A stretch of DNA of 64,000 bases from positions 124,001 to 188,000 of IMG/VR virus record IMGVR_UViG_3300033141_006329; one strand, given 5' to 3'. Positions 2-56,639 of the stretch are shown here, piece by piece; within the stretch, counting starts at the first letter, position 1, and the number at the start of each line of letters is the position of its first letter. Position numbers and translations under genes: made by a program. The notes below the pieces were generated by a model. It did no database searches, was not told the DNA's origin, and worked only from the letters and a program-made list of their open reading frames with translations.

Positions 2-1387
2 CTCAGTGAAGAAACTAACCGAATGGAAGAATCCGTAGTGACAATGAGCGAAGTAGATGTAACTCTTAAGGGACATGCAATGAATGAGTTTGGAAAAGTT
101 GTGGAAGAAAGTCAATCCATGAGAATAAGACCTACCATAATCGAAGATACAAATAGTGCAAGTACAATTCCCATAGAAAATGTAAGACTGATAATCCACG
201 ATCCCAGATATATAATAAAGTTACAATCCAATAGGTTCAAAATGTGTTTAGGATATTTAGTATTACCTAGACCTAGTGATGGCGGCGGATCAAATGGTAT
301 ACCAGGTGCAAGTTGCGGTAGTTCTACAGGATCTTCAGGGTTACAATTTTATGGATCACACAGTATGCGACCAATGACAGGTATAGATAGATTATATTCA
401 GAAATAATAACATCTATAAAGAAAAAGTTAGGAACCAAAGAATTATCGATTCAGAAAAAAGAAATATTGGATATGTTAACCAGAGTTGTTAAGGAATATG
501 ATGCTCAGGAAAATCTCCAATTTAATATAAGATATGTCCCACCAGAAAGAATGGAACATTTCAATATAGAAAGTAGAAGGTTTTTTCCATACGGTGAAGG
601 AATATTTTATAAATCCTCATTCTCAGCTAAATTATTGGCAGTATTTGAAACGGCATTGGTAATAAAAAGAGTATCTGACTCTAGTGATAAAAGGGTAATA
701 TATGTAGAATCCGGTTTACCCAGAAATGTAAGGAATCTGATCGAAGAACTTAAAGAGTCAATGCAGAAGAGGAAATTTAGTATGGATACTATGGGTAATA
801 TAAGTAGTGTTGTATCAATGATTACAAGCTATGAAACCTATTATATTCCTCAAAAACAAGGCAAGCGATATGTAGAGTTTGATCAAATCCCATCCAATAT
901 AAATATAAGAGATTTACATGACGAACTAAAAACCTTTAGAGATCAATTAATATCATCATTAGATGTACCACCTGCATTTGTTAATGTTGATGAAAATACA
1001 CCAAATAAGAATGCCCTATCACACGAGTCAATGTTATTCGCAAAAACTATTGTAGGATATCAAGATCAATTGTCAAGACCAGTGCAAGGCTTATTTTCAA
1101 AAATATATAAGCTGGTGCATGATCAGAAGATACCTTTAGGTATAAATATAACCTTCTTTCCTCCAAGGATGTTGGAAATAGAGAGGGATGCGGAACATAA
1201 TGAGACTGTAGTTAGATTAATCAATGCTTTAGCTGAAGTTGGTATTGATAAAGAATATCTCAAGAGGAAGTATTTATCTATTGACTGGGTCGAACATGAA
1301 GAATATAAGACTAAATCCGAATTAGAGAATAAAACAGAGGGTGAGAAGAAGGATGAAGAAGGTGGAGGTTTTGGTGGTGGATATTAA
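2..1387 (+). CDS. gp20: Portal (head vertex) protein, T4 gp20-like; 5' end lies outside the window
   Basis: Frame is open from the window edge; PYGEGI, ALVIKRV..S.DKRVIYVESG, ETYYIPQKQG and SSLDVPP motifs resemble T4-like portals; followed by scaffold and protease genes. Confidence 0.85.
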   Translation, partial: LSEETNRMEESVVTMSEVDVTLKGHAMNEFGKVVEESQSMRIRPTIIEDTNSASTIPIENVRLIIHDPRYIIKLQSNRFKMCLGYLVLPRPSDGGGSNGIPGASCGSSTGSSGLQFYGSHSMRPMTGIDRLYSEIITSIKKKLGTKELSIQKKEILDMLTRVVKEYDAQENLQFNIRYVPPERMEHFNIESRRFFPYGEGIFYKSSFSAKLLAVFETALVIKRVSDSSDKRVIYVESGLPRNVRNLIEELKESMQKRKFSMDTMGNISSVVSMITSYETYYIPQKQGKRYVEFDQIPSNINIRDLHDELKTFRDQLISSLDVPPAFVNVDENTPNKNALSHESMLFAKTIVGYQDQLSRPVQGLFSKIYKLVHDQKIPLGINITFFPPRMLEIERDAEHNETVVRLINALAEVGIDKEYLKRKYLSIDWVEHEEYKTKSELENKTEGEKKDEEGGGFGGGY

Positions 1388-35722: not shown

Positions 35723-37516
35723 CTAACCAATCATTTCCATAAATGCATCCAGCGTCACTACAGGCACATTATATTTTATAGCCTTATCAATTTTACCCGA
35801 TGTAAAATCTGAGTCGGGTTTAACTAATAATGATAGAGTCTTAGTAACAGATTTAGAAGGTGACCATCCCCACACCTCTGCTAATTTGTGATAATGCGCT
35901 TTCTTTTTAGGAAATGTTCCTGTAAAACAAATTGTTTTTACTTCCATGTTTATTTCCTCCTTTTTGCGAATTTTTAATATGCTTTTTAACGCATCGATAT
36001 AATTCCCTAATATATTTAAACTCAGGAAAATTTCCCCTGAGCGTTCTATACCAATGCCCTCAATTTCCATTAATTCATCTGTTGACATTTTCCTCAGATC
36101 CGATAAAGAACGAGTTTTGAGGACAGATTCACTCATTCTTATCCCAACGCCCTCAATATTAAGAGAGGCGAGGATTTGCCATTCATATACTCCATTGTCT
36201 ATAACCTTATGTATTTCATCATATAGGTTTTGAGCCGAACTATTTGCAAATCCATCCAGCTCCAAAATATCTTCTTTAGTGAGATTAAAAATATCAATCA
36301 GACTGTTACAGTCCTTATTGTCTATTAATTTTTTCAGGGTGGGTTCTCCTAATCTCTCTATGCCTATACGAACAACAGAATCAGAGAGGCATTGTAATAG
36401 CTTACCAGTACACTCATCGTTACTACATCTCAATACAGGCTCGTCATATATGACTTTTTCACCACAAGCAGGACACATGTCCAGTTTTATCTCAATTCTA
36501 TTCTTGCCTGGAATAACTTTTTGGACATCAGGAATTATATCACCACATCGTTCGACTATGATCTCATCCCCTATATGTATATCGTTATCCAATACATACT
36601 TATAGTTATGAAGATTGACATTAGATACTATGACTCCACTAATCTCTACAGGCTCAACTTTGCCTACGGGGGTAATAACATTCTTTCCCGAACTCCAGAA
36701 TATATCTATCAACTTAGTTCTACCTGTAGGGTTTTTGAATTTTAGTGCCATCTGCCCTTTTGGATGATGAGAGGTTGCGCCTAAAGATTTAGAATATTCC
36801 TCATCATGCAATTTAATGACCAGACCATCTGTGGGATATTTATTCATGATAGCTTTTTGTATCAAAGTATTCCAATCTAATTTGGCCATGTGTTTATATT
36901 TCACAGATAGATTGACATGATTAAATGGAACAAAGGTTAATATTTTTCCTAAAGAATCATCTATATCATCTCTATTAAACAAACCAGCACACGCGTTCCT
37001 AGGAGTCTTATATGCCTCACCATTTTTTCTACAGATCTTATCTCGTATTCGATCAAAATCTTTAAGGGTCATAACAATCTCACCGACAACATATTTGGGA
37101 TTTTCATTGCCCTCAAATTTGATTATTGGTAATTTATCGGATATATTCACACCTATATATCCGTTACCTCTTGTCGATAAAACACCAGCATTAAACTCAC
37201 CAGTTGCTCCATCCAATTTTAATTGAATGTCAAATAATTCATTATCGGTCCTCGCTGTTTTTCCACACCATTCTAATATTTCATTTACAGAATATTTTTT
37301 GGCTAATGATAGCATAGGATTTTTATGTGTAATCTTACCTGCTGGTATGGATACAGGTGTATTAATCTCATTTAATAGAGGATGTTTTGGATCAATTGCT
37401 CGCAACTCTTCTACCAGTACATCATACTCTGAATCAGATATGTTCGAGTCATCATCCTCCCAATATAGGCGATCGTGATAGGTAATTAATCTTTCTAATT
37501 CTTCTTTTCTATTCAT
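35723..37516 (-). CDS. ligA: NAD-dependent DNA ligase
   Basis: ISDSEYD, H..PMLSL.K, KLDG, TRGNG..G, PRNA.AG, DGLVIK, ALKF, R.GDIIP, Zn finger, HhH and BRCT. Confidence 0.95.
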   Translation of the reverse strand: MNRKEELERLITYHDRLYWEDDDSNISDSEYDVLVEELRAIDPKHPLLNEINTPVSIPAGKITHKNPMLSLAKKYSVNEILEWCGKTARTDNELFDIQLKLDGATGEFNAGVLSTRGNGYIGVNISDKLPIIKFEGNENPKYVVGEIVMTLKDFDRIRDKICRKNGEAYKTPRNACAGLFNRDDIDDSLGKILTFVPFNHVNLSVKYKHMAKLDWNTLIQKAIMNKYPTDGLVIKLHDEEYSKSLGATSHHPKGQMALKFKNPTGRTKLIDIFWSSGKNVITPVGKVEPVEISGVIVSNVNLHNYKYVLDNDIHIGDEIIVERCGDIIPDVQKVIPGKNRIEIKLDMCPACGEKVIYDEPVLRCSNDECTGKLLQCLSDSVVRIGIERLGEPTLKKLIDNKDCNSLIDIFNLTKEDILELDGFANSSAQNLYDEIHKVIDNGVYEWQILASLNIEGVGIRMSESVLKTRSLSDLRKMSTDELMEIEGIGIERSGEIFLSLNILGNYIDALKSILKIRKKEEINMEVKTICFTGTFPKKKAHYHKLAEVWGWSPSKSVTKTLSLLVKPDSDFTSGKIDKAIKYNVPVVTLDAFMEMIG

Positions 37517-37528
37517 ATTTTTCTCCTT

Positions 37529-37798
37529 TTAATCAGGGTATTTCCCTTTTTGTATGTCCTCAACACTTCTAGACTTTTCTTTTTCCTTAGCCTCACATTC
37601 TTTTTTAGAACAACCTTTCTTAGCATAGTCGTTGCAATAAAACCCTGCCCCTTTAAAAATTATACCTGTACCACCTGTAATAATCCTTCTTATTTCCTCA
37701 CCACATTTTGGACAAATTGTTAGAGGTTCTTCAACCATTTTTTGGAATATCTCAAATTGGTATCCGCATCCTTCACATTTATAATCATAATTTGGCAT
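37529..37798 (-). CDS. FmdB-family zinc ribbon protein
   Basis: MPNYDYKC..CG..FE......CP.CG......FKG.GFY.NDY. Confidence 0.85.
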   Translation of the reverse strand: MPNYDYKCEGCGYQFEIFQKMVEEPLTICPKCGEEIRRIITGGTGIIFKGAGFYCNDYAKKGCSKKECEAKEKEKSRSVEDIQKGKYPD

Positions 37799-38251: not shown

Positions 38252-38782
38252 TTAAACATTCTGCTCCTCCTTTATTTTTTGAATATATGGTTTTAATTCC
38301 TCAAACGATACGGGTTTATAATCCCAAACATCTACTCCCACATTTATTACATTTTTTTGAATTTTAAACAGATCGTGTACATGGGCACATATAAAAATCT
38401 TAGATCTGTCAATACAACTCAAGGCAGGATCATGACACAATATTAAATCAATACCATCAATAGTAATTTCTAAACTTGTATGTACACTCCGAAACCCTAT
38501 ATTATTTACATATGAAAAAGGTTTAAGGGTATCATGATTTCCCAATATTAAAATTTTTATTCCTTTTAATTTTCTAATAACCGACTGATAATAATTCATA
38601 TGTTGGTTTGATCTGAGACTTAAATCACCAACAATATAAACAGTATCATCTTTTCCAACGACCTCATTATGATTTTTTATTAAAGCTTTGTCCATCTCTT
38701 CGCTGGTTTTGTATGGGCGATTACAATACAGAATTGCATTGTAATGACCATAGTGTGGATCCGCCGTAAAGTATATACTCAT
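38252..38782 (-). CDS. Calcineurin-like metallophosphoesterase
   Basis: DPHYGH, GD, GNHD, H and HVH motifs; INVGVD. Confidence 0.9.
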   Translation of the reverse strand: MSIYFTADPHYGHYNAILYCNRPYKTSEEMDKALIKNHNEVVGKDDTVYIVGDLSLRSNQHMNYYQSVIRKLKGIKILILGNHDTLKPFSYVNNIGFRSVHTSLEITIDGIDLILCHDPALSCIDRSKIFICAHVHDLFKIQKNVINVGVDVWDYKPVSFEELKPYIQKIKEEQNV

Positions 38783-38870
38783 TATCCTCTCTCCTTTCTT
38801 TAAAAATAAAATTAGCAAACAAGGTTCTTCATTCATAATTTAATATATATAGTTGAACCGCATATTAGGT

Positions 38871-40179: not shown

Positions 40180-40494
40180 ATGCCAGCAAATAGTAGATTG
40201 TTCGATCTATATGCAGGGGTAACACCATTACCTCCCCATCCACCAATCCCGCCTCCACCAATGGTCGGAGCAATAATAGCATTATGTTCAGGCGATCATA
40301 CAGTAGAATCTTTTAGTCAAGCCACTATCGGAAGTATGGGGTTGGACAACTGTATGATTCATGTGACATTCATAGTAGCAGGAAGCGGGACATCTAAAAC
40401 AAACGGGAAAGCAAAAGCTCGTGTTGGAGATCCTGTTGTCGGTGGTACTATAGGGGTAATGGTAACAGGCGCAGGGACAGAACAGACAGGATGA
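40180..40494 (+). CDS. PAAR-like spike tip protein
   Basis: MPANSRLFD...H; GS....NG...ARVGD.V. Confidence 0.7.
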   Translation: MPANSRLFDLYAGVTPLPPHPPIPPPPMVGAIIALCSGDHTVESFSQATIGSMGLDNCMIHVTFIVAGSGTSKTNGKAKARVGDPVVGGTIGVMVTGAGTEQTG

Positions 40495-40514
40495 TGATAA
40501 TCATCTCAGCCACA
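40494..40514. repeat. Left arm of long-range inverted repeat (partner 41392-41411)
   Basis: ATGATAATCATCTCAGCCACA pairs with TGTGGCTGAGGTATTATTAT. Confidence 0.6.
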
Positions 40515-40531
40515 CATATTAACAAACCAAT

Positions 40532-40569
40532 CTATCTTTAAAAATAATAAGCGTTTAGATAGTGCGCTT
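40532..40569. promoter_or_regulatory. Pseudoknot-like element upstream of RBS
   Basis: Interlocked pairings CTATCT/AGATAG and AAGCG(T)/(G)CGCTT. Confidence 0.45.
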
Positions 40570-40582
40570 TGAGAGGAAAGTT

Positions 40583-41383
40583 ATGAACATGTATCAAGAA
40601 AAATTTGTAGCAGTGGTTAAATGTAATGGAAAAATTATGAGAGAAAGGGATGGAGTTATATCCTTACCATTTGGATCAGAATATTCTATATTATTAAAAA
40701 ATCTTAATACAGTAAAAGCATCTGTAGATATATCTGTAGATAGTATGGATGTGGTTGATGGTCATTCTATTTTAATAGAACCTGAAAAATCTGTAGAGTT
40801 AGAAGGATTTATGAGAGGATCTGTTGCGAGGAATAGATTCAAATTTATAAATAAAACTAAGGAAATATCTGAATATAGGGGTGATAGAATAGATGATGGG
40901 TTAATACGAGTAGAGGTTACATTTGAGAAGAAAATAGAAAAAACAATTACAATATCAGATGGTACTTATTATACTTATTATCCTCCAGTTTATAATCATT
41001 TTACATGGACAGATGGTGGAAGTGGCAGTACTGGTGGTTTATTATCAGAAATGGATTTTTCGATCTCTAATACATGTAGTACCAAATTGGGATCAGGTCA
41101 TGTATCATGTAGTGCCGCCCAGAGTGACATGAGCGAGCCATTATCAGATGAGGGTATAACAGTTAAAGGATCTTCTTGTAATCAAGCATTCGCCCCGGCA
41201 TCAATAGGAATGTTGGAAGATAATTCCTCAGTTATAATATTACAGTTGAGTGGTTATAATGCTGAGGGTATTAAAGTAAAAAGTCCTATAACAGTTAACA
41301 CCAAGATAACATGTGAAACCTGCGGTAAGGGTTCCAAATCTAATTTAAAATTTTGTGGGAATTGTGGAACCTCACTAATATAG
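40583..41383 (+). CDS. Hypothetical protein, beta-rich N-domain and C-terminal zinc ribbon
   Basis: LPFGSEYSILLKN...DGLIRVE...EGITVKGS...C.TCG......FC.NCG; start from GAGAGG RBS. Confidence 0.75.
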   Translation: MNMYQEKFVAVVKCNGKIMRERDGVISLPFGSEYSILLKNLNTVKASVDISVDSMDVVDGHSILIEPEKSVELEGFMRGSVARNRFKFINKTKEISEYRGDRIDDGLIRVEVTFEKKIEKTITISDGTYYTYYPPVYNHFTWTDGGSGSTGGLLSEMDFSISNTCSTKLGSGHVSCSAAQSDMSEPLSDEGITVKGSSCNQAFAPASIGMLEDNSSVIILQLSGYNAEGIKVKSPITVNTKITCETCGKGSKSNLKFCGNCGTSLI

Positions 41384-41459
41384 TACAATCTTGTGGCTGA
41401 GGTATTATTATATTTTTTGAGGATATTATTTTTTATAGTTAATTATCGGAGGATTAAAA

Positions 41460-41738
41460 ATGAAAGAACAAACCGTTAAACAATCTGAGGAATTAAAACA
41501 AGCAATAGAATCAAGGGATAAATTTTTACAAAGACATCCTAACCTAAAAATATTTCAAATGGAAATCGACAATGCTTTAGATAGGGTAAAGGACCCCTTA
41601 GAGAGATTGAGAATTCTATTCAAGTTAATAACTAAAAGAAATAATGAGCTACAGGAGGCAATAAACGAATACAAAATTGAATATACTTCATTACCTGAGG
41701 ATGTCAAGAAAGAAGTAGAACCTGTAACAATGTTGTGA
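41460..41738 (+). CDS. Hypothetical helical protein; stop codon supplied by IS end
   Basis: GGAGG RBS; TGA lies inside the IS right end. Confidence 0.6.
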   Translation: MKEQTVKQSEELKQAIESRDKFLQRHPNLKIFQMEIDNALDRVKDPLERLRILFKLITKRNNELQEAINEYKIEYTSLPEDVKKEVEPVTML

Positions 41739-41880
41739 ACTACCACAACTTCAAGTTGCAGCTTCCTGCTTCGCTGAAATCCACTTGACAAGGTTCTATA
41801 CAAGCAACCAAGTTAGAGGTTGATCTCTCAGCAGGCGTTGAACTGATGCGTCCCGCACCAGTTTGATTTAACCCTTTATA
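41735..41880 (-). ncRNA. Predicted omegaRNA/reRNA scaffold overlapping tnpB 3' end
   Basis: Position at right end as known for TnpB; 5' boundary approximate; guide would start at 41734 (AACAUUGUUACAGGUUCUAC). Confidence 0.55.
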
Positions 41881-42990
41881 GAGGATGTTCTTTGCAGCAT
41901 GAATGTCACGATCTTTTCTATAACCACAGTCGCAGACGAACATCCTATCTTTTAAGGTTAGTGATTTGTTAATTGCGTTACACGCAGGACATAATTTAGT
42001 GGAGGGATAGTATCTATCTACGAGCCTTAGAGTATGTGACTTTTTCTTTAAGTCACTCATTATTCCTCCAAGGATTGAATGTTGAACTGATTTTCCAAAC
42101 CACTTCTCGCTCCACCCTTTAATATTCTCGTCTTGCACACAGACAATTTTATACTTCTTTGTGATATGCGAAACAATTTTGTTTTTCGCATCTTTCTTCT
42201 GATTAGTTAACTTGTTGTATTTCTTAGCTATCTTCGAATTGAGTTTCCTATTATTCTTAGAGCCTTTCTTCTTGTGTTTCTTCTTTCGTTGAAGACGTTT
42301 TAGACTTTCTGGTATTGGGAATGAGAAGCTATGCTTCTCACCATTATCAAAAGTAAGAGAAGTCTTGATGCCGAAGTCAATGCCTATAGCTTCCTGTTCA
42401 AACACTTTCTCTTCCTTCGGTAAATAGCAAGTGACATGTAAGAAATAATCTTCGCATTTTCGTACGAGGTTCGCTGTTGCAATCTCTGCATTTGAAGGGA
42501 TTTGTTTCAAACCTATCAGTTTGAAACTACCCTTAAATCCTTGCAGCTTGAGATACTTGCCTCGCAGCTTATGCGTACTATTGAATTGCTTCAGATAAAT
42601 GCTATTCGATCTACTCTTGAACTTCAATCTACCTACTTTCTTACCTTTCTTCTTCTTAGCAGATAGTCCACAAATGTTGTGAAACAACCTCTCTCGAACG
42701 CCCTGCTTCATCTGAGAAGAAATCGCTTCAAGCGAACGAGTTTCGGCGATTTTATCTTTTCCGCAAATTGAGATCTCGTTCACTTTAGTATTAAAATTTA
42801 CCGGGTTATCTGTACCTAACATACAATTATACAACCACTTAGCTTCTAAGAATAAACGATCCAGGTACTCTCGTTTTTTCTTGGAGAGATGTGATTTATC
42901 AAACTTCAGCTCGTAAACTTTACAAATCAAAGACTTACGTCTTTCTCTTGTAGCCTTACCAGCCAGTTTGATTCTTTCGTTTTTTGTCAT
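41740..42990 (-). CDS. tnpB: TnpB RNA-guided endonuclease
   Basis: AIGIDFGIK (RuvC-I), YYPSTKLC.AC, C.CG...DRDIHAAKNI (RuvC-III). Confidence 0.93.
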   Translation of the reverse strand: MTKNERIKLAGKATRERRKSLICKVYELKFDKSHLSKKKREYLDRLFLEAKWLYNCMLGTDNPVNFNTKVNEISICGKDKIAETRSLEAISSQMKQGVRERLFHNICGLSAKKKKGKKVGRLKFKSRSNSIYLKQFNSTHKLRGKYLKLQGFKGSFKLIGLKQIPSNAEIATANLVRKCEDYFLHVTCYLPKEEKVFEQEAIGIDFGIKTSLTFDNGEKHSFSFPIPESLKRLQRKKKHKKKGSKNNRKLNSKIAKKYNKLTNQKKDAKNKIVSHITKKYKIVCVQDENIKGWSEKWFGKSVQHSILGGIMSDLKKKSHTLRLVDRYYPSTKLCPACNAINKSLTLKDRMFVCDCGYRKDRDIHAAKNILYKGLNQTGAGRISSTPAERSTSNLVACIEPCQVDFSEAGSCNLKLW

Positions 42991-48976: not shown

Positions 48977-49708
48977 ATGGGTAGTAAATATGAGACCCCT
49001 ATAGTCGTGCCTAAAGATTATATTGTAAATCCCAAAGAACGTGGAATGTTTGGAAGGACTAATCTTGTTAATATTAAGGTTCGAAATATTGTAACAGGGG
49101 AAATAGAAAGTGATCAAAATAGTAACCTTATAGTATACAGAGGAAGAGACTGGCTATTACAAAGGGCTTATAATGCTGGATTTGGAAGCGGCACTAGAGA
49201 TGGTGAACAATGGGAAGCTATGTGGATAAATTGGTTAGCAGTAGGTACGGGTGGGTCAGTAGGTGGAAATCCATTGACTCCTACAAGTCCTGCATTACCA
49301 GATTATGTATTAAATACGCATGGAACTGTTGATGTGGGAAGTAATTATATTACAGTTGGCGGAAAGGAATATCATACATTTGATTCTGGATTCCCAAAAT
49401 TCTTACACGATACGGATGTAACGGAGACTGTATATGGTCCTTCTTTTACTGATTATAACGGTACAACTAATCCTAGTGACAGCGTATTGATAGGGCTGGT
49501 TAAAGTGACGCTCTCATCTGAAGAATGTAATGGTGGGGCACTGGATACAGATTATCAGGATATTTCTGAGGCAGGTTTATTTATAAGCAGCTCGGCTAGT
49601 GTTGGATCTCCTCCTACTCAGTTGGAATTATTTGCAAGAGTGTGCTTTTCAACAGTAAGAAAGAACAACGAAAGGGAAATTATCCTAAGTTGGTTCACGT
49701 ATTTCTAA
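48977..49708 (+). CDS. Baseplate / tail-fibre attachment protein
   Basis: NLIV..GR..L, AVGTGG, ISEAGLF, LFARV.F....K motifs. Confidence 0.65.
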   Translation: MGSKYETPIVVPKDYIVNPKERGMFGRTNLVNIKVRNIVTGEIESDQNSNLIVYRGRDWLLQRAYNAGFGSGTRDGEQWEAMWINWLAVGTGGSVGGNPLTPTSPALPDYVLNTHGTVDVGSNYITVGGKEYHTFDSGFPKFLHDTDVTETVYGPSFTDYNGTTNPSDSVLIGLVKVTLSSEECNGGALDTDYQDISEAGLFISSSASVGSPPTQLELFARVCFSTVRKNNEREIILSWFTYF

Positions 49709-49804: not shown

Positions 49805-50998
49805 ATGGTTAGTTGTAAATTATGCGGTAAAAAATTTGAAACTTTAAGAGGTGTTGCTACGCATCTAAGATTTTGTAAAAAGAATCTGAATGAAATGAAA
49901 ATTGTAGATTATTATAATCAATTTATAAAACAAGGTATTGAAGGAAAGTGTGTACTGTGTGGAAAATATACTAGATTTAACGGATTAGATATAGGTTTTT
50001 CTACGTATTGTGGGAGTCGATGTGCAGCACTTGGTGTAAATAAAGGATTAAAGGCAAATCCCAGAATAAATGAACCAAAAAAGAAATCGGTTATCTGCAA
50101 AATGTGTAATAAAAAATTAAACAATATAAATAGCTTGGGGAACCATCTTAAATATTGTAAATCTAATATTGATAGATTAAATTCAAACCAATATTATAAT
50201 AAATATATAAAGAAAGATGATGAAGAATTATGTAAAACATGTGGAAATGTTACTAAATTCAAAGGTCTGGAGAAAGGTTATGATGCATATTGTAGTAAGA
50301 TTTGTTCAAACAGAGATAGACCGATTTCAGAAAAATTAAATAATACTATTATGTATACAGATAGATTACAAAAAATTGGACTTGAACCTATATATGAAGG
50401 TGAATATTTTACCGGACGCCAAGAGATAGAATTCAAGTGTTCAAAATGTAGTCGTATATTTAAAAATTATACATTTAATATATTAAAAATTAGAAACAAA
50501 TGTCCATTTTGTACAGATAAAAGTAGATCAATATCTGAAAGATTAATATATTCATATCTAAAACATAAATTTCATAAATATAATGTTTATAACAATTATA
50601 AAAAATTATTATATCCATTTGAAATAGATATAATAATGCCTTCTCTTAATATATCTTTAGAATATAATGGTCTTTATTATCATTCAAGTCAAAATTCTCA
50701 AAATAGAGATTTGTGGAAATCACATGGATGCATCAAAAATAATTTCAAGCATGTGGTTATATGGGAAGACGAGTTTAATATACATAATAAAGATTATAAA
50801 TTTATAGATACCATAATAAAAAATGCTATGGAATGTGATGTTAAAAAATACATGAAAAATACAAAATATTTTACAACATTTCCTATCAGTATAGCCGATA
50901 TAGACAACTTCGATAAAACTAAAAGATTTAAACTTTTACAGTTGAGTGAATGTAATAAAAACTTTAAAAGACCTCCAAGATCATTATTCGTCCCATAA
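49805..50998 (+). CDS. Free-standing homing endonuclease: duplicated zinc-finger module plus Vsr-like nuclease
   Basis: Two C..C...HL..C...C..CG....F.GL..G...YC modules; EIDI......LEYNGLYYH...IWED. Confidence 0.75.
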   Translation: MVSCKLCGKKFETLRGVATHLRFCKKNLNEMKIVDYYNQFIKQGIEGKCVLCGKYTRFNGLDIGFSTYCGSRCAALGVNKGLKANPRINEPKKKSVICKMCNKKLNNINSLGNHLKYCKSNIDRLNSNQYYNKYIKKDDEELCKTCGNVTKFKGLEKGYDAYCSKICSNRDRPISEKLNNTIMYTDRLQKIGLEPIYEGEYFTGRQEIEFKCSKCSRIFKNYTFNILKIRNKCPFCTDKSRSISERLIYSYLKHKFHKYNVYNNYKKLLYPFEIDIIMPSLNISLEYNGLYYHSSQNSQNRDLWKSHGCIKNNFKHVVIWEDEFNIHNKDYKFIDTIIKNAMECDVKKYMKNTKYFTTFPISIADIDNFDKTKRFKLLQLSECNKNFKRPPRSLFVP

Positions 50999-51024
50999 TT
51001 TCTAAAAATAATCAAAAAGATATT

Positions 51025-51052
51025 AGGGAGGGGCTTTCGCCCCTTCCTTTTT
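51025..51052. terminator. Intrinsic terminator
   Basis: AGGGAGGGGC-TTTC-GCCCCTTCCT followed by T tract, between convergent genes. Confidence 0.75.
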
Positions 51053-51791
51053 ATCCAACCATTTCTCCGGATCCTAACCGTATATCCCAAGAATACTTCC
51101 CACTTATATCCGATAGTTCATCGCTTATTTGATCTTTACTTTTAACCACAACTCCGCTAAAACATCCTAACGCAGTGTCTTGAAAACAACCTCTAATATG
51201 TTCGAATTGTGTCATATAGATCTCCTCTTGTATTGACTTGTTAATAGATAAATCGTTAAATATATCAATCAATGATGGTTTCTTAAAATCTATCCATACA
51301 TAATTTATGATACTTTCTGCTTCACCTTTAGTCGCACAATACTCATCCTCAAGAAGTTTCTCCTGAAGATCTTTCCTAGTAACTAGACATAAATCTCTAT
51401 CATTTGAACCACAGATATTAGATATAAGTTCTCTGGGATTTATACTTATATTAAATTTCTTCACCAACTCATGTAAAATAATACACATAGTCTCTGCTTT
51501 ATCGTATTCTATTCTACGCAATAACCCAATTGCTCTCTGCCCTGGTTTTATTATCAATGCCTCTATACCTTCCGCCGATATAAATTTAATGGAAGGAATA
51601 ATATTAATATTCAAATTATTACCTAAAACTTTTAAAGGATATTTAGTATACAAATCAAAATTTTCCGGAACATTAAAACTGACGGTTATAGGTGAATTAT
51701 TATATTTTATTGAACACACCTTCAGCCAATCAGCAACAGCAGAATAATTAGGAGAAGTTAAGCATACATTAAAGTCCTCTAAACATGTCAT
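51051..51791 (-). CDS. Hypothetical protein
   Basis: 246-aa ORF overlapping end of LRR gene. Confidence 0.55.
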   Translation of the reverse strand: MTCLEDFNVCLTSPNYSAVADWLKVCSIKYNNSPITVSFNVPENFDLYTKYPLKVLGNNLNINIIPSIKFISAEGIEALIIKPGQRAIGLLRRIEYDKAETMCIILHELVKKFNISINPRELISNICGSNDRDLCLVTRKDLQEKLLEDEYCATKGEAESIINYVWIDFKKPSLIDIFNDLSINKSIQEEIYMTQFEHIRGCFQDTALGCFSGVVVKSKDQISDELSDISGKYSWDIRLGSGEMVG

Positions 51792-52584
51792 CTTTGTCCT
51801 CCTCTTCTACTAGTTCTGTCCCTAATAAATTTTCATCTACTCCTAAATTAAAATATTCAGGACAAGATGTAATAAACTCTTTTTGTATAACTTCTTTGGT
51901 TTTGAATAAACCTTCAGTCATTAACATTTCCTCTACTATTGTGATAGCATCATTTATAGATATATTCTTAATATGAGATACTCTGGGTAGAAGACTGAAT
52001 ACAATGCGATCAGAACTATGCCTAGTGTGAGTTTTTATTTCAACTCCACCAAAAACTGCCATTATGAAAATATCACCACCTACTAAATTTACTACAAATT
52101 CATCATCCAACCAAGTGTATCTTTTAGATATAAAGGGTTTACCATTGAAGGTTTTTAAATTTGGTAGAGCTTTTAAAATATAGGATTGATGAAAAGGTAT
52201 ATCTGCATAGAGATGAACTAAATTTTTCAAATTACATAATGGAAGATAATTGTTGATACTATTGTTAGATATGTTTAGATATTGTAGAGTAGTCATATCT
52301 TTTAAGGGTGCTATATCACCTATACAGTTACTATACAAATCAATATGTTCTAAAGGAAGATTTTCTAAGGGTGTTAAATCACAAGCATACCCATTCTGCA
52401 TCCTAAGAGATATTAAATTTCTACATTTATGTAATCCTGTAAGATTAGTAATATTATCCTTTATTATTAATGATTTAACTTTTAAAAAATCCTCTTTAGT
52501 CAGTTTATGCATACAACTTAAACCAAGCATATGTTGTATACAACGCTTCATTACAGGATTAAGTGTTTTATATTTGTGTGTCAT
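51769..52584 (-). CDS. Leucine-rich repeat protein
   Basis: ITNLTGL..C.NL..L, DLTPL..L.L..IDL..N.I.DI.PL repeats; start from GGAGG RBS. Confidence 0.8.
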   Translation of the reverse strand: MTHKYKTLNPVMKRCIQHMLGLSCMHKLTKEDFLKVKSLIIKDNITNLTGLHKCRNLISLRMQNGYACDLTPLENLPLEHIDLYSNCIGDIAPLKDMTTLQYLNISNNSINNYLPLCNLKNLVHLYADIPFHQSYILKALPNLKTFNGKPFISKRYTWLDDEFVVNLVGGDIFIMAVFGGVEIKTHTRHSSDRIVFSLLPRVSHIKNISINDAITIVEEMLMTEGLFKTKEVIQKEFITSCPEYFNLGVDENLLGTELVEEEDKDDMFRGL

Positions 52585-52691: not shown

Positions 52692-52753
52692 GACTAGGAT
52701 AAACGTTTAGGATGATAATCCTATTTAAAACACTCATAAAAAAGGAGATTATA

Positions 52754-54448
52754 ATGGCTCATGTAGCACCCGGTGTATACACCAAGATAATTGACCTTTC
52801 CGAATATGTTGCAGGAATTCCCTCTACTATAGGGTTCCTACCAATCATATGCGAACAAGGTCCAGACAATCAGTTAATTCAAACTAATGCTAAGGATTTC
52901 TATGTTGATTTTGGCGAACCTAACATTAGTTATGCAGGAAAAGCAGCAGGACAAGGTCCTTATATTGCAGGATCTTATCTAAGAGAAAGTGATTCTCTTT
53001 ATGTAATCAGGTGTTTACCTGAAGATGCTAATTTTTCGAACTTAAGTATTTTAGCGGAAGCAGAAGGCGGCTATGGGGCGGATTCCACATCAGATGTAAC
53101 CATTGATAGTGATACTGGTATTAACACAACTGGTGAGCTAGAAACATTACTAACGAGCGGTGACGCATGTATAGTTTTTTACGGAGTAGGAAGAGGAGAT
53201 TTTTATAATAATTTCCAAGTTAGTATAAGCAAACATTCTAATCCACAACTATCTGATCCTGCAATTATGGGTCATTATGATATGGTTTATGTGCTGGATT
53301 TATATAAGAGACAATCTGAGGATGATGAGGATGGTTTACCACAGTATGAAATCATATCTTCCTTTGAGGTATCATTTAATCCTGTCCGGCTAGATGCGAG
53401 TGGAGAAAGTATGTTCATCGGGGATATCATAGATAGATATAGTCGATATGTAAAATGCGTTGTTGATAGAGATAAATGTGGCGTAGCCGTTAATGCTGGA
53501 CATGCCGATTTTTCTCAACCATTTGTATCAGGTGCTATTAATCTGGACAATGGCGATGTGGGTAGCCTTTTTACTGCGACTGGTATTGACCTTGATGTTG
53601 CGAAGCAAATATTAGGTAAGGCTTATACAGGTACTTTACCTAAGACTCAGACAGGACTTTACGTTGACGAAGTTTTGGATACAGAAGATGTCTATTTTAC
53701 TATCGTTTTGGATGGTGGATATGCAACGGATGTAAAGAGTCAGATATATACGCTAGTCCAAACTAGGAAGGATTGTGTTGCCCTGATTGATAACGGCGAC
53801 AATACAACTCCTGCTAATGCTATAGTAGCTCGTGATGATAACCATACTTATAATACTAAGTATATGGCATTATATGAGAGCTACAGTAAAATATACGATA
53901 CTTATACCGGACGTGATATATGGGTCAGCCCAATATATCATATGGCTAATATCGTTCCTTATACTGATAATGTAGCTGAGGTTTGGTGGGCACCTGCAGG
54001 ATTTAATAGAGCCACTATCGGAACTATTAAGGAACTGCGTTATAGCCCCCGTCTAGGAGAGAGAGATAATTTTTACTTAAAACAAATAAATCCAATCGTG
54101 AAATTTAATGTTGGGTATACAGTGTTTTCACAATTAACCACACAGAAGAGACCAAGTGCATTACAAGATTTAAATATCATACGTTTAGTGCTATATTGCA
54201 AAAGGGCCATAGAACAATTTGCCAAATTTTTTATTTTTGAGCAAAATGATGCCCTCACATGGTCATCAATTTCTATACAAGTAAATAAATTCTTAAAAGT
54301 TATACAAGATAAGAGAGGTTTGTATAGTTACAGTGTTGATGTTGGGGCCTCAGAATATGAGTTAAAAAGCAAGCAAATACATCTGAACGTTACCCTTGAA
54401 CCTACCCGCGTGGTGGAACAAATTTATCTAAATTTCTTCATTAAGTAA
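52754..54448 (+). CDS. gp18: Tail sheath protein, T4 gp18-like
   Basis: APGVYTKIIDLS, FGEP, RKDCVALID, WWAPAGFNR, INPI, FEQND..T motifs. Confidence 0.93.
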   Translation: MAHVAPGVYTKIIDLSEYVAGIPSTIGFLPIICEQGPDNQLIQTNAKDFYVDFGEPNISYAGKAAGQGPYIAGSYLRESDSLYVIRCLPEDANFSNLSILAEAEGGYGADSTSDVTIDSDTGINTTGELETLLTSGDACIVFYGVGRGDFYNNFQVSISKHSNPQLSDPAIMGHYDMVYVLDLYKRQSEDDEDGLPQYEIISSFEVSFNPVRLDASGESMFIGDIIDRYSRYVKCVVDRDKCGVAVNAGHADFSQPFVSGAINLDNGDVGSLFTATGIDLDVAKQILGKAYTGTLPKTQTGLYVDEVLDTEDVYFTIVLDGGYATDVKSQIYTLVQTRKDCVALIDNGDNTTPANAIVARDDNHTYNTKYMALYESYSKIYDTYTGRDIWVSPIYHMANIVPYTDNVAEVWWAPAGFNRATIGTIKELRYSPRLGERDNFYLKQINPIVKFNVGYTVFSQLTTQKRPSALQDLNIIRLVLYCKRAIEQFAKFFIFEQNDALTWSSISIQVNKFLKVIQDKRGLYSYSVDVGASEYELKSKQIHLNVTLEPTRVVEQIYLNFFIK

Positions 54449-54534: not shown

Positions 54535-55644
54535 TTATTCCATTAAAATCTTTTTAAATTCTTTATCATTTATATCTAAAATACTACCTTTTTTATTAAC
54601 TTTAATTCTAATAAATCTACAACCCAACTCTTTAATTATTTCTTTCTGTCTTCTAACATCTTCAAGTTTGAGACACCCTCCCAGATAATGGTGAGACTCG
54701 TCTATTTCTATAGCAATATTTCTTTTCTTATCATACCCATCTAGAAAATACCCAATGACTCTATATTCACCACCCCTCTCAGCATGCTGAAAATCAAATC
54801 CTTTATCATTTAGAATTTCTATTATATGGCAACCCTTAGAATTATAATAGGGAGTCACTTGACCATTACAATTTTCAATTTTAGATAATGTCATTTCCCT
54901 TCTCTGTAGTCGAAATTCTTTTGTTTTTGAATAACTGTCTACACCATATTTTTTTAAACAAGTTTGTTTTCTATTAATTATTGCTTCGGGACTAAGTAAT
55001 ATTGCAGCCGCATCTCTATCTAAAGAAGCACAACTAATATTACAATAACTATCAACTGCAAAACCCTTAATAAGACTAATAAATTTGGTAGCATTATTAC
55101 AACTGTCTCTTTTACATTTTGAAGGTTTACCTCCTAAATATTTGATATGATATTCTTCCAGCTCTTTGTCACCAAATCGATGTATACCATTATGAATAGA
55201 AAGATGTTTAGATAAATCATATTTATTTTCAAATCTTTTCTCAATACTATTCTCTAAACAAATCATACAAACTTCTGGTAGTTCATAATATCCTTCCTCT
55301 ATTTTCTTATGTTCTGCTTTATCCTTCCAGTTTTTAGATCTAATTTTCTTGGAGTCAGGGTTTAGATTTCTACAATGTTTACAATATTGATTACCGCTAT
55401 TGCTTTTATTTGCCCGGTAACCATTATTTGTCTCATAAAAACTCATCTCCCCACCACAAACACAACAATATTTTTCTTTCTTTAATTCATTAGGGTTATC
55501 TATAATATAAACATCAAAATATTTATTTTTTATATTTTTCAAACCCTGAATATTATGTGCATTTCTTAAATGTTGTGCCAAACCATTTGCATTTGCAACC
55601 AGTTTTCCACATATTGCACATTTAGTTTTAAATTCTTCTCTCAT
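54535..55644 (-). CDS. Free-standing homing endonuclease (C2H2 fingers plus Vsr/EDxHD-like nuclease)
   Basis: QHAE.GGEY...GYFLDGYD...IAIEIDE.HH. Confidence 0.75.
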   Translation of the reverse strand: MREEFKTKCAICGKLVANANGLAQHLRNAHNIQGLKNIKNKYFDVYIIDNPNELKKEKYCCVCGGEMSFYETNNGYRANKSNSGNQYCKHCRNLNPDSKKIRSKNWKDKAEHKKIEEGYYELPEVCMICLENSIEKRFENKYDLSKHLSIHNGIHRFGDKELEEYHIKYLGGKPSKCKRDSCNNATKFISLIKGFAVDSYCNISCASLDRDAAAILLSPEAIINRKQTCLKKYGVDSYSKTKEFRLQRREMTLSKIENCNGQVTPYYNSKGCHIIEILNDKGFDFQHAERGGEYRVIGYFLDGYDKKRNIAIEIDESHHYLGGCLKLEDVRRQKEIIKELGCRFIRIKVNKKGSILDINDKEFKKILME

Positions 55645-56639
55645 ATACTACTTCCTTTAAACAACTCACTCTCAAAATCAAAACTAATAACAGGATTATC
55701 CTTAAGATAAGTCTTGAGTTTACATCTGCTCATACCTAAAATAAGAACCTTTAAAAAATCAAATAATTCATATAAATTCACATCTTTGATGGTTGAATGT
55801 ATATTTTCATCATTATCCTCAGGAGAATATAAAATTTCCCAATATAATTTCGACATAGGATAAATTGTCAATATAGAATAAATCTCACCATAATATTCAT
55901 GTGTTTCTTCCAACCACCATCTCTTCAAATTAGGTTGTGTGGCCCACACTACTCCATTTATAAATACATTATCATAGTTTATACGGTTTAGCCCAGAAAC
56001 ATTATATAATTTTTTAACGATGTCATTTGAAATTCCACTGCCTTCATAATCAATATCCAATTCAGTCAGCTTTGGTAACTGTTCTAATATACTTAAATCT
56101 AAGGAAGAATTATTTGGAATACCTAAATAACTCAATTTATCTAAATTAGAAATAGGATATACATTTTTTAATAATTCACAATATTGCAAATCCAATCTCC
56201 TCAATTTTAATAACCCACTGATTGGACATATATCAGTAATTGGATTATTGCTTAAATTCAATTCTTCTAAATTTAATAGATTTTCAATCCCGCATATTGT
56301 GGGAATTTTATTATCAGCAATGTATAAGTATTTTAAATTATATAGACATACTAACGGGGATATGTCCATAATTCTATTTGAAAATAAATCCAGTTTCTTC
56401 AGACTGATAAGATTTTTTAAAGGCTTTAAATCTGTTATTGTATTGTTAAACAAATCCAACTCTACCAAATTAATAAAATATTCTAATCCACCTATCGATT
56501 CTAATTTCTTTTCAGATAAATCTAATTTTGTTATACTCTCTACTTCATCCTTATATACAGGATCATCAGATCTTTTATTTAAAATTTCTTTTATAATATC
56601 TCTTAATTTTCCATATTCAAATTTCAATTCTTCTCTCAT
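55641..56639 (-). CDS. Internalin-like leucine-rich repeat protein
   Basis: About 7 LxxLxxLxLxxNxIxDLxPL repeats; C-domain INGVVW...W.I.Y. Confidence 0.85.
   Translation of the reverse strand: MREELKFEYGKLRDIIKEILNKRSDDPVYKDEVESITKLDLSEKKLESIGGLEYFINLVELDLFNNTITDLKPLKNLISLKKLDLFSNRIMDISPLVCLYNLKYLYIADNKIPTICGIENLLNLEELNLSNNPITDICPISGLLKLRRLDLQYCELLKNVYPISNLDKLSYLGIPNNSSLDLSILEQLPKLTELDIDYEGSGISNDIVKKLYNVSGLNRINYDNVFINGVVWATQPNLKRWWLEETHEYYGEIYSILTIYPMSKLYWEILYSPEDNDENIHSTIKDVNLYELFDFLKVLILGMSRCKLKTYLKDNPVISFDFESELFKGSSI

What the first reader, a model, noticed from the sequence alone, without database searches (positions are those of the whole stretch)
40494..41411. Hypothetical gene enclosed by a long-range inverted repeat
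Seen: ATGATAATC-ATCTCAGCCACA (40494-40514) pairs with TGTGGCTGAGGT-ATTATTAT (41392-41411): a perfect 10-bp core and about 20 bp with one bulge and two G-U pairs. The arms sit at the upstream stop and 8 nt after this gene's stop, bracketing only this gene and its structured leader. G-U pairs favour pairing in the + strand RNA. Inference: the mRNA is looped out as a panhandle (RNase III-type excision, circularisation or self-packaging), or this is a small mobile cassette. The protein has no recognisable transposase or nuclease motif.
Basis: partly seen in the sequence, partly recalled or inferred. Interest (0 to 1): 0.75.

Follow-up and report, generated by a model that had tools for sequence, protein, structure and literature searches.

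The report
Phage mRNA closed by end-to-end pairing
The inverted repeat around this phage gene is real and conserved: it most likely lets the two untranslated ends of the gene's messenger RNA pair with each other, next to a previously uncatalogued pseudoknot in the leader. This makes it a new regulatory RNA architecture for one conserved tail-region gene of large phages.

Summary

On its own the match is borderline; about 0.4% of random segment pairs score as well. Comparison makes it significant.
- The gene (266 aa: beta-sandwich domains plus a C-terminal zinc ribbon, function unknown) is a single-copy gene of the tail module in a large clade of tailed phages.
- In two independent sets of homologous loci (65 and 68), each 5' flank fits its own 3' flank better than those of other loci (p<=1e-4).
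- The geometry is fixed and the sequences differ.
- G:U-type mismatches outnumber A:C-type 16 to 3, which points to pairing in the sense-strand RNA.

The "structured leader" is an H-type pseudoknot with strong covariation. It occurs once per genome, always before this gene, also in cultured jumbo phages (XacN1, RAS14, Xoo-sp13), and is not in Rfam.

A sister clade has a local hairpin where the 5' arm sits. The long-range helix therefore looks like a split 5'-terminal hairpin.

Operon-embedded copies such as this window's have the longest helices (17-25 bp), long enough for RNase III. The mobile-cassette reading is rejected. No transcript data could be found.

The parts
40494..40514 (+). 5' arm of the long-range helix. 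Weaker pairing may extend out to 40488. It starts on the last base of the upstream PAAR-like gene's stop codon.
   Evidence: The homologous arm in L110 carries compensatory changes.
40532..40562 (+). Pseudoknot stem S1: CTATCT (40532-40537) pairs with AGATAG (40557-40562).
   Evidence: Alignment A2 of 64 leaders. Helix 1 is 96% paired and 5 of its 7 pairs show changes on both sides. The covariance model R1 matches 40517-40591 at E=6e-8.
40549..40569 (+). Pseudoknot stem S2: AAGCGT (40549-40554) pairs with GCGCTT (40564-40569). It crosses S1, giving an H-type topology.
   Evidence: Helix 2 is 99% paired and all 5 pairs show changes on both sides.
40571..40578 (+). Shine-Dalgarno region (GAGAGGAA), 4-5 nt before the ATG and just 3' of the pseudoknot.
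   Evidence: Sequence. AAGGAG is conserved at this position in A2.
40583..41383 (+). Coding sequence of 266 aa. It has an N-terminal beta-sandwich domain, a variable linker, a second conserved beta domain and a C-terminal zinc ribbon. It is a conserved phage protein of unknown function.
41392..41411 (+). 3' arm of the long-range helix. Weaker pairing may extend to 41416.
   Evidence: The helix is kept in both the minimum-energy and the centroid fold of the 940-nt RNA.
41413..41418 (+). T run directly after the 3' arm. No local terminator hairpin follows the gene in this window.

Best explanation
The two arms are the 5'-UTR and 3'-UTR strands of one helix in the sense-strand mRNA of a conserved tail-module gene of large myoviruses.

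Shown:
- The helix closes the whole message into a panhandle. Just inside it, next to the ribosome-binding site, sits a gene-specific H-type pseudoknot.
- The pairing is conserved by compensatory change at a fixed geometry. The 5' arm ends about 55-70 nt before the ATG. The 3' arm starts about 5-16 nt after the stop.
- The pairing is selected at the RNA level on the + strand.
- The pairing is specific to this gene.
- In a sister clade and in cultured relatives, a local hairpin fills the same slot.

Inferred:
- The helix does the job of a 5'-terminal stem, with its second strand supplied by the 3' UTR. It keeps the message's ends base-paired and so shields them from end-dependent and leader-cutting ribonucleases.
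- It also ties that protection to completion of the transcript.
- In loci like this window's, the gene sits inside a run of same-strand genes with no promoter motif or terminator of its own. There the helix is 17-25 bp, long enough to be cut by the host's RNase III. That cut would release a monocistronic message that still ends in a short closing helix.
- The pseudoknot is most likely the operator of a gene-specific translational control, possibly by the zinc-ribbon protein itself.
For: Recurrence and co-evolution:
- In 65 non-redundant homologous loci, a locus's own 3' flank fits its own 5' flank better than other loci's 3' flanks do (score 24.6 against 17.4, permutation p<5e-5).
- This was replicated on 68 further loci found through a DNA pattern rather than through the protein (22.4 against 17.1, p=1e-4).
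- The flanks of this gene pair far better than those of 360 neighbouring genes (Mann-Whitney p=1e-11).
- The geometry is fixed while the sequences differ, and the helix is flipped in L029 and L069.
- L110, which has the window-like context and homologous flanks, carries a perfect 17-bp helix with compensatory changes.

RNA level:
- With symmetric mismatch scoring there are 16 G:U-type and 3 A:C-type mismatches. The control ratio is 0.50, giving p=0.002.
- The panhandle is present in both the minimum-energy and the centroid fold.

Slot equivalence:
- In the 'MMY' clade, 36 of 41 loci have a strong local hairpin and 1 of 41 has a long-range helix.
- In the window's clade, 25 of 46 have a long-range helix and 7 of 46 a local hairpin (p=2e-6 and p=1e-10).
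- The cultured phages XacN1 and Xoo-sp13 have a local hairpin plus an ordinary terminator.

Context and length:
- 4 of 6 operon-embedded loci have the strongest helices, against 2 of 60 other loci (Fisher p=3e-4).

Pseudoknot:
- 97.3% of cells are paired. There are 136 double-change cells against 26 in shuffles, reached by 0 of 500 shuffles.
- It occurs once per genome, always before this gene.

Precedent:
Against: - No transcript data exist for this or any related locus, so it is not shown that both arms lie on one RNA or where the RNA ends are.
- A sigma-70-like match (TTAACA-18-AATAAT, 40519-40548) would start transcription inside the leader and leave out the 5' arm. It is only a consensus match.
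- Most helices are 8-15 bp, too short for RNase III, so processing cannot be the general function.
- About a third of loci in the window's clade show neither a clear long-range helix nor a clear local hairpin.
- Within the first set of 66 loci, local-hairpin strength and long-range score were not anticorrelated (Spearman 0.09). The either/or pattern appears only between clades.
- The phage record encodes no RNase III.
- Protein binding to the pseudoknot is pure inference.
Confidence: 0.6

Rival explanations
1. Chance complementarity. The window's repeat is a coincidence in AT-rich intergenic DNA.
For: A helix this good occurs in 0.4% of random segment pairs, so about 0.36 are expected among the window's 89 genes. 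10-mer inverted pairs are common, 240 at spacings of 200-1500 nt in the window.
Against: The same bracket recurs at the same geometry in dozens of homologous loci with different sequences. It is also absent from neighbouring genes.
Confidence: 0.03
2. DNA-level element. The arms are terminal inverted repeats of a small mobile cassette, or the recombination sites of an invertible segment.
For: The repeats bracket exactly one gene. A TnpB gene lies 360 nt downstream.
Against: - The gene is single copy, and the arm 12-mer is not a dispersed repeat.
- The gene lies immediately upstream of the virion-protein and tail-sheath genes in 63 of 81 loci and always has the same orientation.
- The arms differ in sequence between genomes, which is unlike transposase- or invertase-recognised ends.
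- The mismatch asymmetry (16 G:U-type against 3 A:C-type) is not expected for DNA duplex sites.
- TnpB is absent from the relatives' loci.
Confidence: 0.03
3. Translational switch of the hok or icaR type. The 5'-3' pairing holds the message in an inactive form, or the 3' UTR masks the ribosome-binding site, until processing or a trans-acting factor releases it.
For: 5'/3' pairing is the core of both known systems (icaR: PMC3868564; hok: my own knowledge). The helix lies next to a structured leader and the ribosome-binding site.
Against: - The arms do not touch the Shine-Dalgarno sequence or the start codon.
- The 3' flank shows no co-evolving complementarity with the ribosome-binding region (matched 17.5 against 17.4, p=0.37).
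- The 5' arm shows only a marginal one with the ribosome-binding region (16.0 against 15.5, p=0.05).
- A sister clade replaces the helix with a plain local hairpin.
Confidence: 0.12
4. Long-range intrinsic terminator. The 3' arm pairs back to the 5' arm as RNA polymerase reaches the T run, and this ends transcription after the gene.
For: In the window the 3' arm is followed at once by TTTTTT (41413-41418), and there is no local terminator hairpin.
Against: In relatives the 3' arm is followed either by a separate canonical terminator hairpin or directly by the next gene's ribosome-binding site without a T run. A stem whose partner was made about 900 nt earlier is kinetically unfavourable; this last point is inference.
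Confidence: 0.05

Closest known systems
B. subtilis hbs mRNA 5'/3'-UTR interaction (Braun, Durand and Condon 2017, PMC5737220)
   Same: [quoted passage not shown] In hbs it limits endonuclease (RNase Y) access to the leader and so affects mRNA fate.
   Different: The hbs case is a single cellular gene. Here the pairing is conserved by covariation across well over a hundred phage lineages. It is combined with a leader pseudoknot, and it alternates evolutionarily with a local 5' hairpin. Any effect on nucleases is untested here.
S. aureus icaR 5'-3' UTR pairing (PMC3868564)
   Same: The 3' UTR of a bacterial mRNA pairs with its own 5' UTR, and the duplex is an RNase III substrate.
   Different: In icaR the 3' UTR masks the Shine-Dalgarno sequence. 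Here the helix lies about 55-70 nt upstream of the start and shows no co-evolving pairing with the ribosome-binding site.
Processing stems of rRNA operons and RNase III sites of phage T7 early mRNAs (own knowledge)
   Same: Flanking complementary sequences form a stem at the base of a long RNA. RNase III cuts the stem to release the unit from a polycistronic precursor. This fits the 17-25 bp helices of the operon-embedded loci (WIN, L110, L021, L002, L001).
   Different: The unit here is a protein-coding gene. T7 sites are local hairpins between genes. Most members of this family have helices too short for RNase III, together with their own promoter motif and terminator.
5'-terminal stem-loop stabilisers such as the ompA leader (own knowledge)
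   Same: A base-paired 5' end protects a message. The sister clade and XacN1 carry exactly such a local hairpin in the same slot.
   Different: In the window's clade the second strand of the stem has moved about 900 nt away, into the 3' UTR.
Pseudoknot translational operators: T4 gene 32 leader, E. coli rpsO (S15), L20 long-range pseudoknot (own knowledge)
   Same: A gene-specific pseudoknot lies just upstream of the ribosome-binding site and is conserved together with the gene it precedes.
   Different: There is no sequence or Rfam match. The topology is unusual: a long first loop, a 2-nt second loop, and the 3' strands of the two stems adjoining (one base apart in the window). Binding by the gene product is untested.

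Membership tests
5'/3'-UTR interaction within one bacterial or phage mRNA (hbs type) | Complementarity between the 5' and 3' untranslated flanks of the same gene, maintained in evolution | tested here: met
   Matched flanks score higher than mismatched flanks in two independent sets. Compensatory changes are seen between WIN and L110.
5'/3'-UTR interaction within one bacterial or phage mRNA (hbs type) | Both strands lie on one transcript | not testable with these tools
   No RNA run was listed for the window.
5'/3'-UTR interaction within one bacterial or phage mRNA (hbs type) | Selection acts on the RNA of the sense strand | tested here: met
   16 G:U-type mismatches against 3 A:C-type; null ratio 0.50; p=0.002.
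RNase III processing stem | About two helical turns (roughly 20 bp or more) of double-stranded RNA | tested here: inconclusive
   Met or nearly met in the window (20-25 pairs), L021, L002, L001 and L110 (17-25 pairs). Not met in most relatives (8-15 bp).
RNase III processing stem | Cleavage within the stem | not testable with these tools
   This needs end mapping or an in vitro cleavage assay. The phage record itself has no RNase III gene.
hok/sok-type fold-back inhibition | An alternative, mutually exclusive pairing of an arm with the translation initiation region | tested here: not met
   There is no co-evolving complementarity of the 3' flank with the ribosome-binding region (p=0.37), and only a marginal one for the 5' arm (p=0.05).
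Transposon, MITE or gene cassette with terminal inverted repeats | Several copies or variable genomic positions, with ends conserved in sequence | tested here: not met
   Single copy. The arm is not a dispersed repeat. The gene is syntenic with the sheath module in most loci. The arms differ in sequence between genomes.
Invertible DNA segment (Gin/Hin type) | Both orientations occur, and a site-specific recombinase is nearby | tested here: not met
   The orientation relative to the downstream virion-protein gene is the same in all 63 loci that show it. No recombinase was found among the neighbours scanned.
H-type pseudoknot leader or operator | Two crossing helices, each supported by covariation, next to the ribosome-binding site | tested here: met
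   12 pairs, 97.3% paired, 10 pairs with changes on both sides, 0 of 500 shuffles as high, and slid controls at 26-39% paired.
H-type pseudoknot leader or operator | Binding of a regulatory protein or ligand | not testable with these tools
   This needs gel-shift, toeprint or in-line probing assays.
Any curated Rfam family | A match to a covariance model | tested here: not met
   There was no relevant match at E<=10 in the window's locus and none at E<=1 in ten related loci.

The most novel reading that the evidence does not exclude
The pseudoknot plus the end-to-end helix (or its local-hairpin equivalent) is the operator of an autogenous control. In this reading the zinc-ribbon protein binds its own closed-loop message to set its dosage during tail assembly. 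That would be a new and widespread class of post-transcriptional autoregulation of a structural-module gene in jumbo phages, directly testable in the cultured phage XacN1.
Probability: 0.3. Interest if true: 0.75.

Novelty: new variant of a known kind. Interest (0 to 1): 0.6.

Why it matters
Pairing between the two untranslated ends of a bacterial message is known from only a handful of single-gene case studies. Here the same architecture is conserved by covariation across well over a hundred phage lineages. It also comes with a built-in natural experiment: a sister clade uses a local 5' hairpin in the same slot, which says what the helix is for.

The finding also delivers a strongly supported, uncatalogued pseudoknot motif. 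It is tied to one conserved gene of unknown function, and it is present in cultured jumbo phages of Xanthomonas and Stenotrophomonas, where it can be tested at the bench.

Tried and rejected
- **Loose duplex energy as a statistic.** It was not discriminating: 11% of random pairs do as well. I replaced it with a compact-helix score.
- **DNA similarity to known phages.** No match.
- **Rfam.** No relevant match.
- **RNA-seq support.** Only two DNA runs from marine sediment were listed, and no RNA run.
- **Closer relatives of the window's gene.** The JGI metagenome scan returned nothing nearer than about 43% identity over the full length.
- **Structure-blind alignment of the 3' flanks.** MAFFT could not put the 3' arms in register, because a run of A's of variable length precedes them. 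RNAalifold on the joined flanks found nothing. I therefore used matched-versus-mismatched permutation tests instead of a column-wise covariation count for the long-range helix.
- **Anticorrelation of local hairpin and long-range helix within the first 66 loci.** Not significant. The either/or pattern appears only when the two clades are compared.
- **Switch hypothesis (arms against the ribosome-binding site).** No convincing signal.
- **A 'GAACA' box upstream of the 5' arm.** It is enriched in relatives (52 of 66). In the window, however, it is just the coding end of the upstream gene (L110 has AGAAGA there), so I do not count it as a part here.
- **Protein function.** Pfam, PHROGs, NCBIfam, PDB sequence and fold searches, BFVD, AlphaFold DB and the ESM Atlas gave only uncharacterised viral beta-sandwich proteins. 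The XacN1 paper lists its homologue, ORF366, only as hypothetical.
- **Phage-encoded RNase III or RtcB.** None found in the 223-kb record, which is estimated 71% complete.

Full report
**1. The observation**

- The arms are at 40494-40514 and 41392-41411.
- The core is a perfect 10 bp, CTCAGCCACA with TGTGGCTGAG.
- There are 20 pairs in all, with one bulged C and two G-U pairs.
- The left arm begins on the last base of the upstream gene's stop codon. The right arm begins 8 nt after this gene's stop.

As RNA the + strand duplex is worth -24.9 kcal/mol, against -19.8 for the minus strand.

Taken alone this is only suggestive. A loose duplex energy of this size is reached by 11% of random segment pairs. 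As a compact helix it is reached by 0.4%. It is the best of the window's 89 genes, which means about 0.36 such cases are expected per window.

**2. The gene and its setting**

The window is part of a large AT-rich phage genome. It is a 223-kb IMG/VR record, estimated 71% complete.

The gene at 40583-41383 encodes 266 aa:
- a conserved N-terminal beta-sandwich domain;
- a variable linker, often rich in histidine in relatives;
- a second conserved beta domain;
- a C-terminal zinc ribbon.

The family is very large. More than 1,500 proteins were found at about 45-53% identity, and 452 stretches in IMG/VR. Every library returns only uncharacterised viral beta-sandwich proteins.

In 63 of the 81 related loci the gene lies directly upstream of a virion structural protein (phrog_19418), usually followed by the tail sheath gene, and always in the same orientation. 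In the window those two genes are at 48977-49708 and 52712-54448. A TnpB gene, an HNH endonuclease and other genes are inserted in between. The gene is single copy in its genome.

Cultured relatives exist at 29-36% identity: the jumbo phages XacN1, RAS14, CM1 and Xoo-sp13 of Xanthomonas and Stenotrophomonas. In XacN1 and Xoo-sp13 the gene sits next to the tail sheath gene.

**3. The flanking complementarity is conserved, gene-specific and at the RNA level**

In 80 homologous loci from IMG/VR the flanks again pair with each other, but with different sequences. Examples are AAGACTTGCCCCAAA with TTTGGGGCAAGTCTT, AAATGGCTCGTTACC with GGTAACGAGCCATTT, and GGCGGCTGCTC with GAGCAGCCGCC.

The geometry is nearly constant. 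The 5' arm ends 55-70 nt before the ATG, and the 3' arm starts 5-16 nt after the stop.

The statistical tests agree:
- The flanks of this gene pair much better than those of 360 other genes in the same loci (Mann-Whitney p=1e-11).
- Each 5' flank fits its own 3' flank better than the 3' flanks of other loci (24.6 against 17.4, permutation p<5e-5). The own partner is the single best in 13 of 65 loci.
- The result was replicated on 68 further loci fetched by a DNA pattern for the leader rather than by the protein (22.4 against 17.1, p=1e-4). These include 17-30 bp helices in L146, L204, L122, L168, L135, L144 and L142.
- In L029 and L069 the helix is flipped, with GTAGGGCA upstream and TGCCCTAC downstream.
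- L110 has the window-like gene context and visibly homologous flanks. It carries a perfect 17-bp helix, TATCAATCATACTTCCA with TGGAAGTATGATTGATA. Its inner part differs from the window's on both strands.

With a scoring that treats all mismatches alike, G:U-type mismatches outnumber A:C-type by 16 to 3. In helices between unrelated loci the ratio is 0.50, so p=0.002. That asymmetry is what pairing in the sense-strand RNA predicts, and what a DNA-level site does not.

The panhandle is part of both the minimum-energy and the centroid structure of the 940-nt RNA.

**4. The structured leader is a pseudoknot**

The roughly 55 nt between the 5' arm and the Shine-Dalgarno sequence align well across 64 loci. 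They contain two crossing helices:
- S1: consensus CAGACT with AGTCTG; in the window CTATCT (40532-40537) with AGATAG (40557-40562).
- S2: consensus AGGTC with GACCT; in the window AAGCGT (40549-40554) with GCGCTT (40564-40569).

On the alignment 97.3% of cells are paired. Ten of the 12 pairs show changes on both sides. There are 136 double-change cells against 26 in shuffles, reached by 0 of 500 shuffles. Slid controls drop to 26-39% paired.

A covariance model of the leader hits once in the window, once in the whole phage record and, with one weak exception, once per related locus, always directly before this gene.

The model also finds the leader in XacN1, RAS14 and Xoo-sp13. There both stems have changed completely, to CCACCT with AGGTGG and AGGCTC with GAGCCT.

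A collection-wide scan with the commonest S1 sequence gave 120 stretches. At least 100 of them are followed at once by a family gene.

Nothing in Rfam matches.

**5. What the long-range helix is for**

The key comparison is the slot just 5' of the pseudoknot.

| Clade | Loci | Strong local hairpin in the slot | Long-range helix |
|---|---|---|---|
| Proteins starting MMY... | 41 | 36 | 1 |
| The window's clade | 46 | 7 | 25 |

The differences are significant (p=1e-10 for the local hairpin and p=2e-6 for the long-range helix).

XacN1 and Xoo-sp13 also have a local hairpin there, and an ordinary terminator directly after the stop codon.

The local hairpins often read TTGTAGG...CCTACAA. That is the same CCTACA strand which, as CCTACATG, forms the commonest 5' arm in the window's clade. 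The long-range helix therefore looks like a split version of a hairpin at the start of the leader, with one strand relocated to the 3' UTR. This last step is inference.

In both clades a promoter-like AT-rich motif precedes the slot by a few bases. So the hairpin or the 5' arm probably lies at or near the 5' end of the message. No start site has been mapped.

By established knowledge a base-paired 5' end protects bacterial messages. The closest precedent is the 14-bp 5'/3'-UTR helix that limits RNase Y cleavage in the B. subtilis hbs leader (PMC5737220).

I found no sign of a switch. The 3' flank does not co-evolve with the ribosome-binding region, and the 5' arm does so only marginally.

**6. 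Why the window's helix is long**

Helix strength tracks context. In four loci the gene is packed between same-strand genes, has no promoter motif, and has no terminator hairpin. These are the window, L021, L002 and L001, and they have the four strongest helices, with 21-25 pairs. Loci with their own promoter motif and terminator mostly have 8-20 pairs (Fisher p=3e-4). L110, fetched afterwards, has the same context and a perfect 17-bp helix.

The window has no local terminator after the gene.

Helices of 17-25 bp are in, or just short of, the range that RNase III accepts. Cutting such a stem would release a monocistronic message that still ends in a short closing helix. That would be the same end state that the promoter-and-terminator loci reach directly. 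The phage record has no RNase III gene of its own, so the host's enzyme would have to act.

**7. Rejected readings**

- A mobile cassette or an invertible segment is contradicted on several counts. The gene is single copy, syntenic with the sheath module in most loci, and constant in orientation. The arms are genome-specific in sequence and are not a repeat family. The mismatch asymmetry points to RNA.
- A long-range terminator fits the T run at 41413-41418, but it does not fit the relatives.
- Circularisation and packaging of the RNA have no support.

**8. Verdict**

- The RNA panhandle reading is supported by strong comparative evidence, but there are no transcript data.
- The function is inferred: protection of the paired ends and, in this operon-embedded locus, probably processing, together with a gene-specific pseudoknot operator.
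- It is a new variant of a known kind (5'/3'-UTR interaction), plus an uncatalogued pseudoknot motif conserved from sediment phages to cultured jumbo phages.

Noticed in passing
41740-42990 (- strand): A TnpB (IS605 OrfB / Cas12f-like) gene with no TnpA next to it. It converges on the 92-aa ORF at 41460-41738, so its expected guide-RNA region would overlap that ORF in antisense. The relatives' loci have nothing equivalent here.
   Followed up: partly
49805-50998 (+ strand): A gene for an HNH / homing-type endonuclease with an N-terminal zinc finger. It is inserted between the virion structural protein gene (48977-49708) and the tail sheath gene (52712-54448).
   Followed up: partly
L002:2613-2906, and the equivalent genes in L001, L021 and L060: In this subgroup, which has the longest flanking helices, the gene directly upstream of the target encodes a cold-shock-domain protein (Pfam CSD, E=4e-20). 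Such proteins are RNA chaperones, so the neighbourhood may not be accidental.
   Followed up: no
Related loci, e.g. L023:3624, L038:4175, L048:2190: The motif TTAATATATATAG recurs upstream of several structural genes. Before the virion-protein gene it is followed about 27 nt later by TAGAACAAAATATAAAG. This is probably the promoter system for the clade's structural (probably late) genes. The window lacks it before the target gene.
   Followed up: partly
51001-51029 and 51819-51847 (gene 51051-51791, - strand): The second-best flanking complementarity in the window (score 36). It is AU-rich and gapped, and its upstream arm lies inside the neighbouring ORF, so it is probably chance.
   Followed up: partly
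Alignment A1, linker region (about residues 120-185 of the window's protein): Many relatives carry histidine runs (HHHHH) and serine/glycine-rich low-complexity sequence between the two conserved domains. The window's protein has a shorter linker without histidine runs.
   Followed up: no
Proteins P0004 and P0012: NCBI records file some family members under Asgard archaeal bins (Thorarchaeota, Heimdallarchaeaceae). Elsewhere the family's loci show strong Shine-Dalgarno sequences, bacterial-type intrinsic terminators, tail sheath genes and Xanthomonas phage relatives. That suggests phage contigs binned with the wrong organism, but the contigs of these two proteins were not examined.
   Followed up: no
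35723-37516, 37529-37798 and 38252-38836 (- strand); 40180-40494 (+ strand): The neighbours are an NAD-dependent DNA ligase, a small Zn_ribbon_8 protein, a metallophosphoesterase and a weak PAAR-like protein directly upstream of the target. A ligase and a phosphoesterase also flank the homologue in L111, so this neighbourhood is partly conserved.
   Followed up: partly
55641-56639 (- strand): A leucine-rich-repeat protein (LRR_4, E=3e-22) encoded in the phage genome downstream of the tail sheath gene.
   Followed up: no
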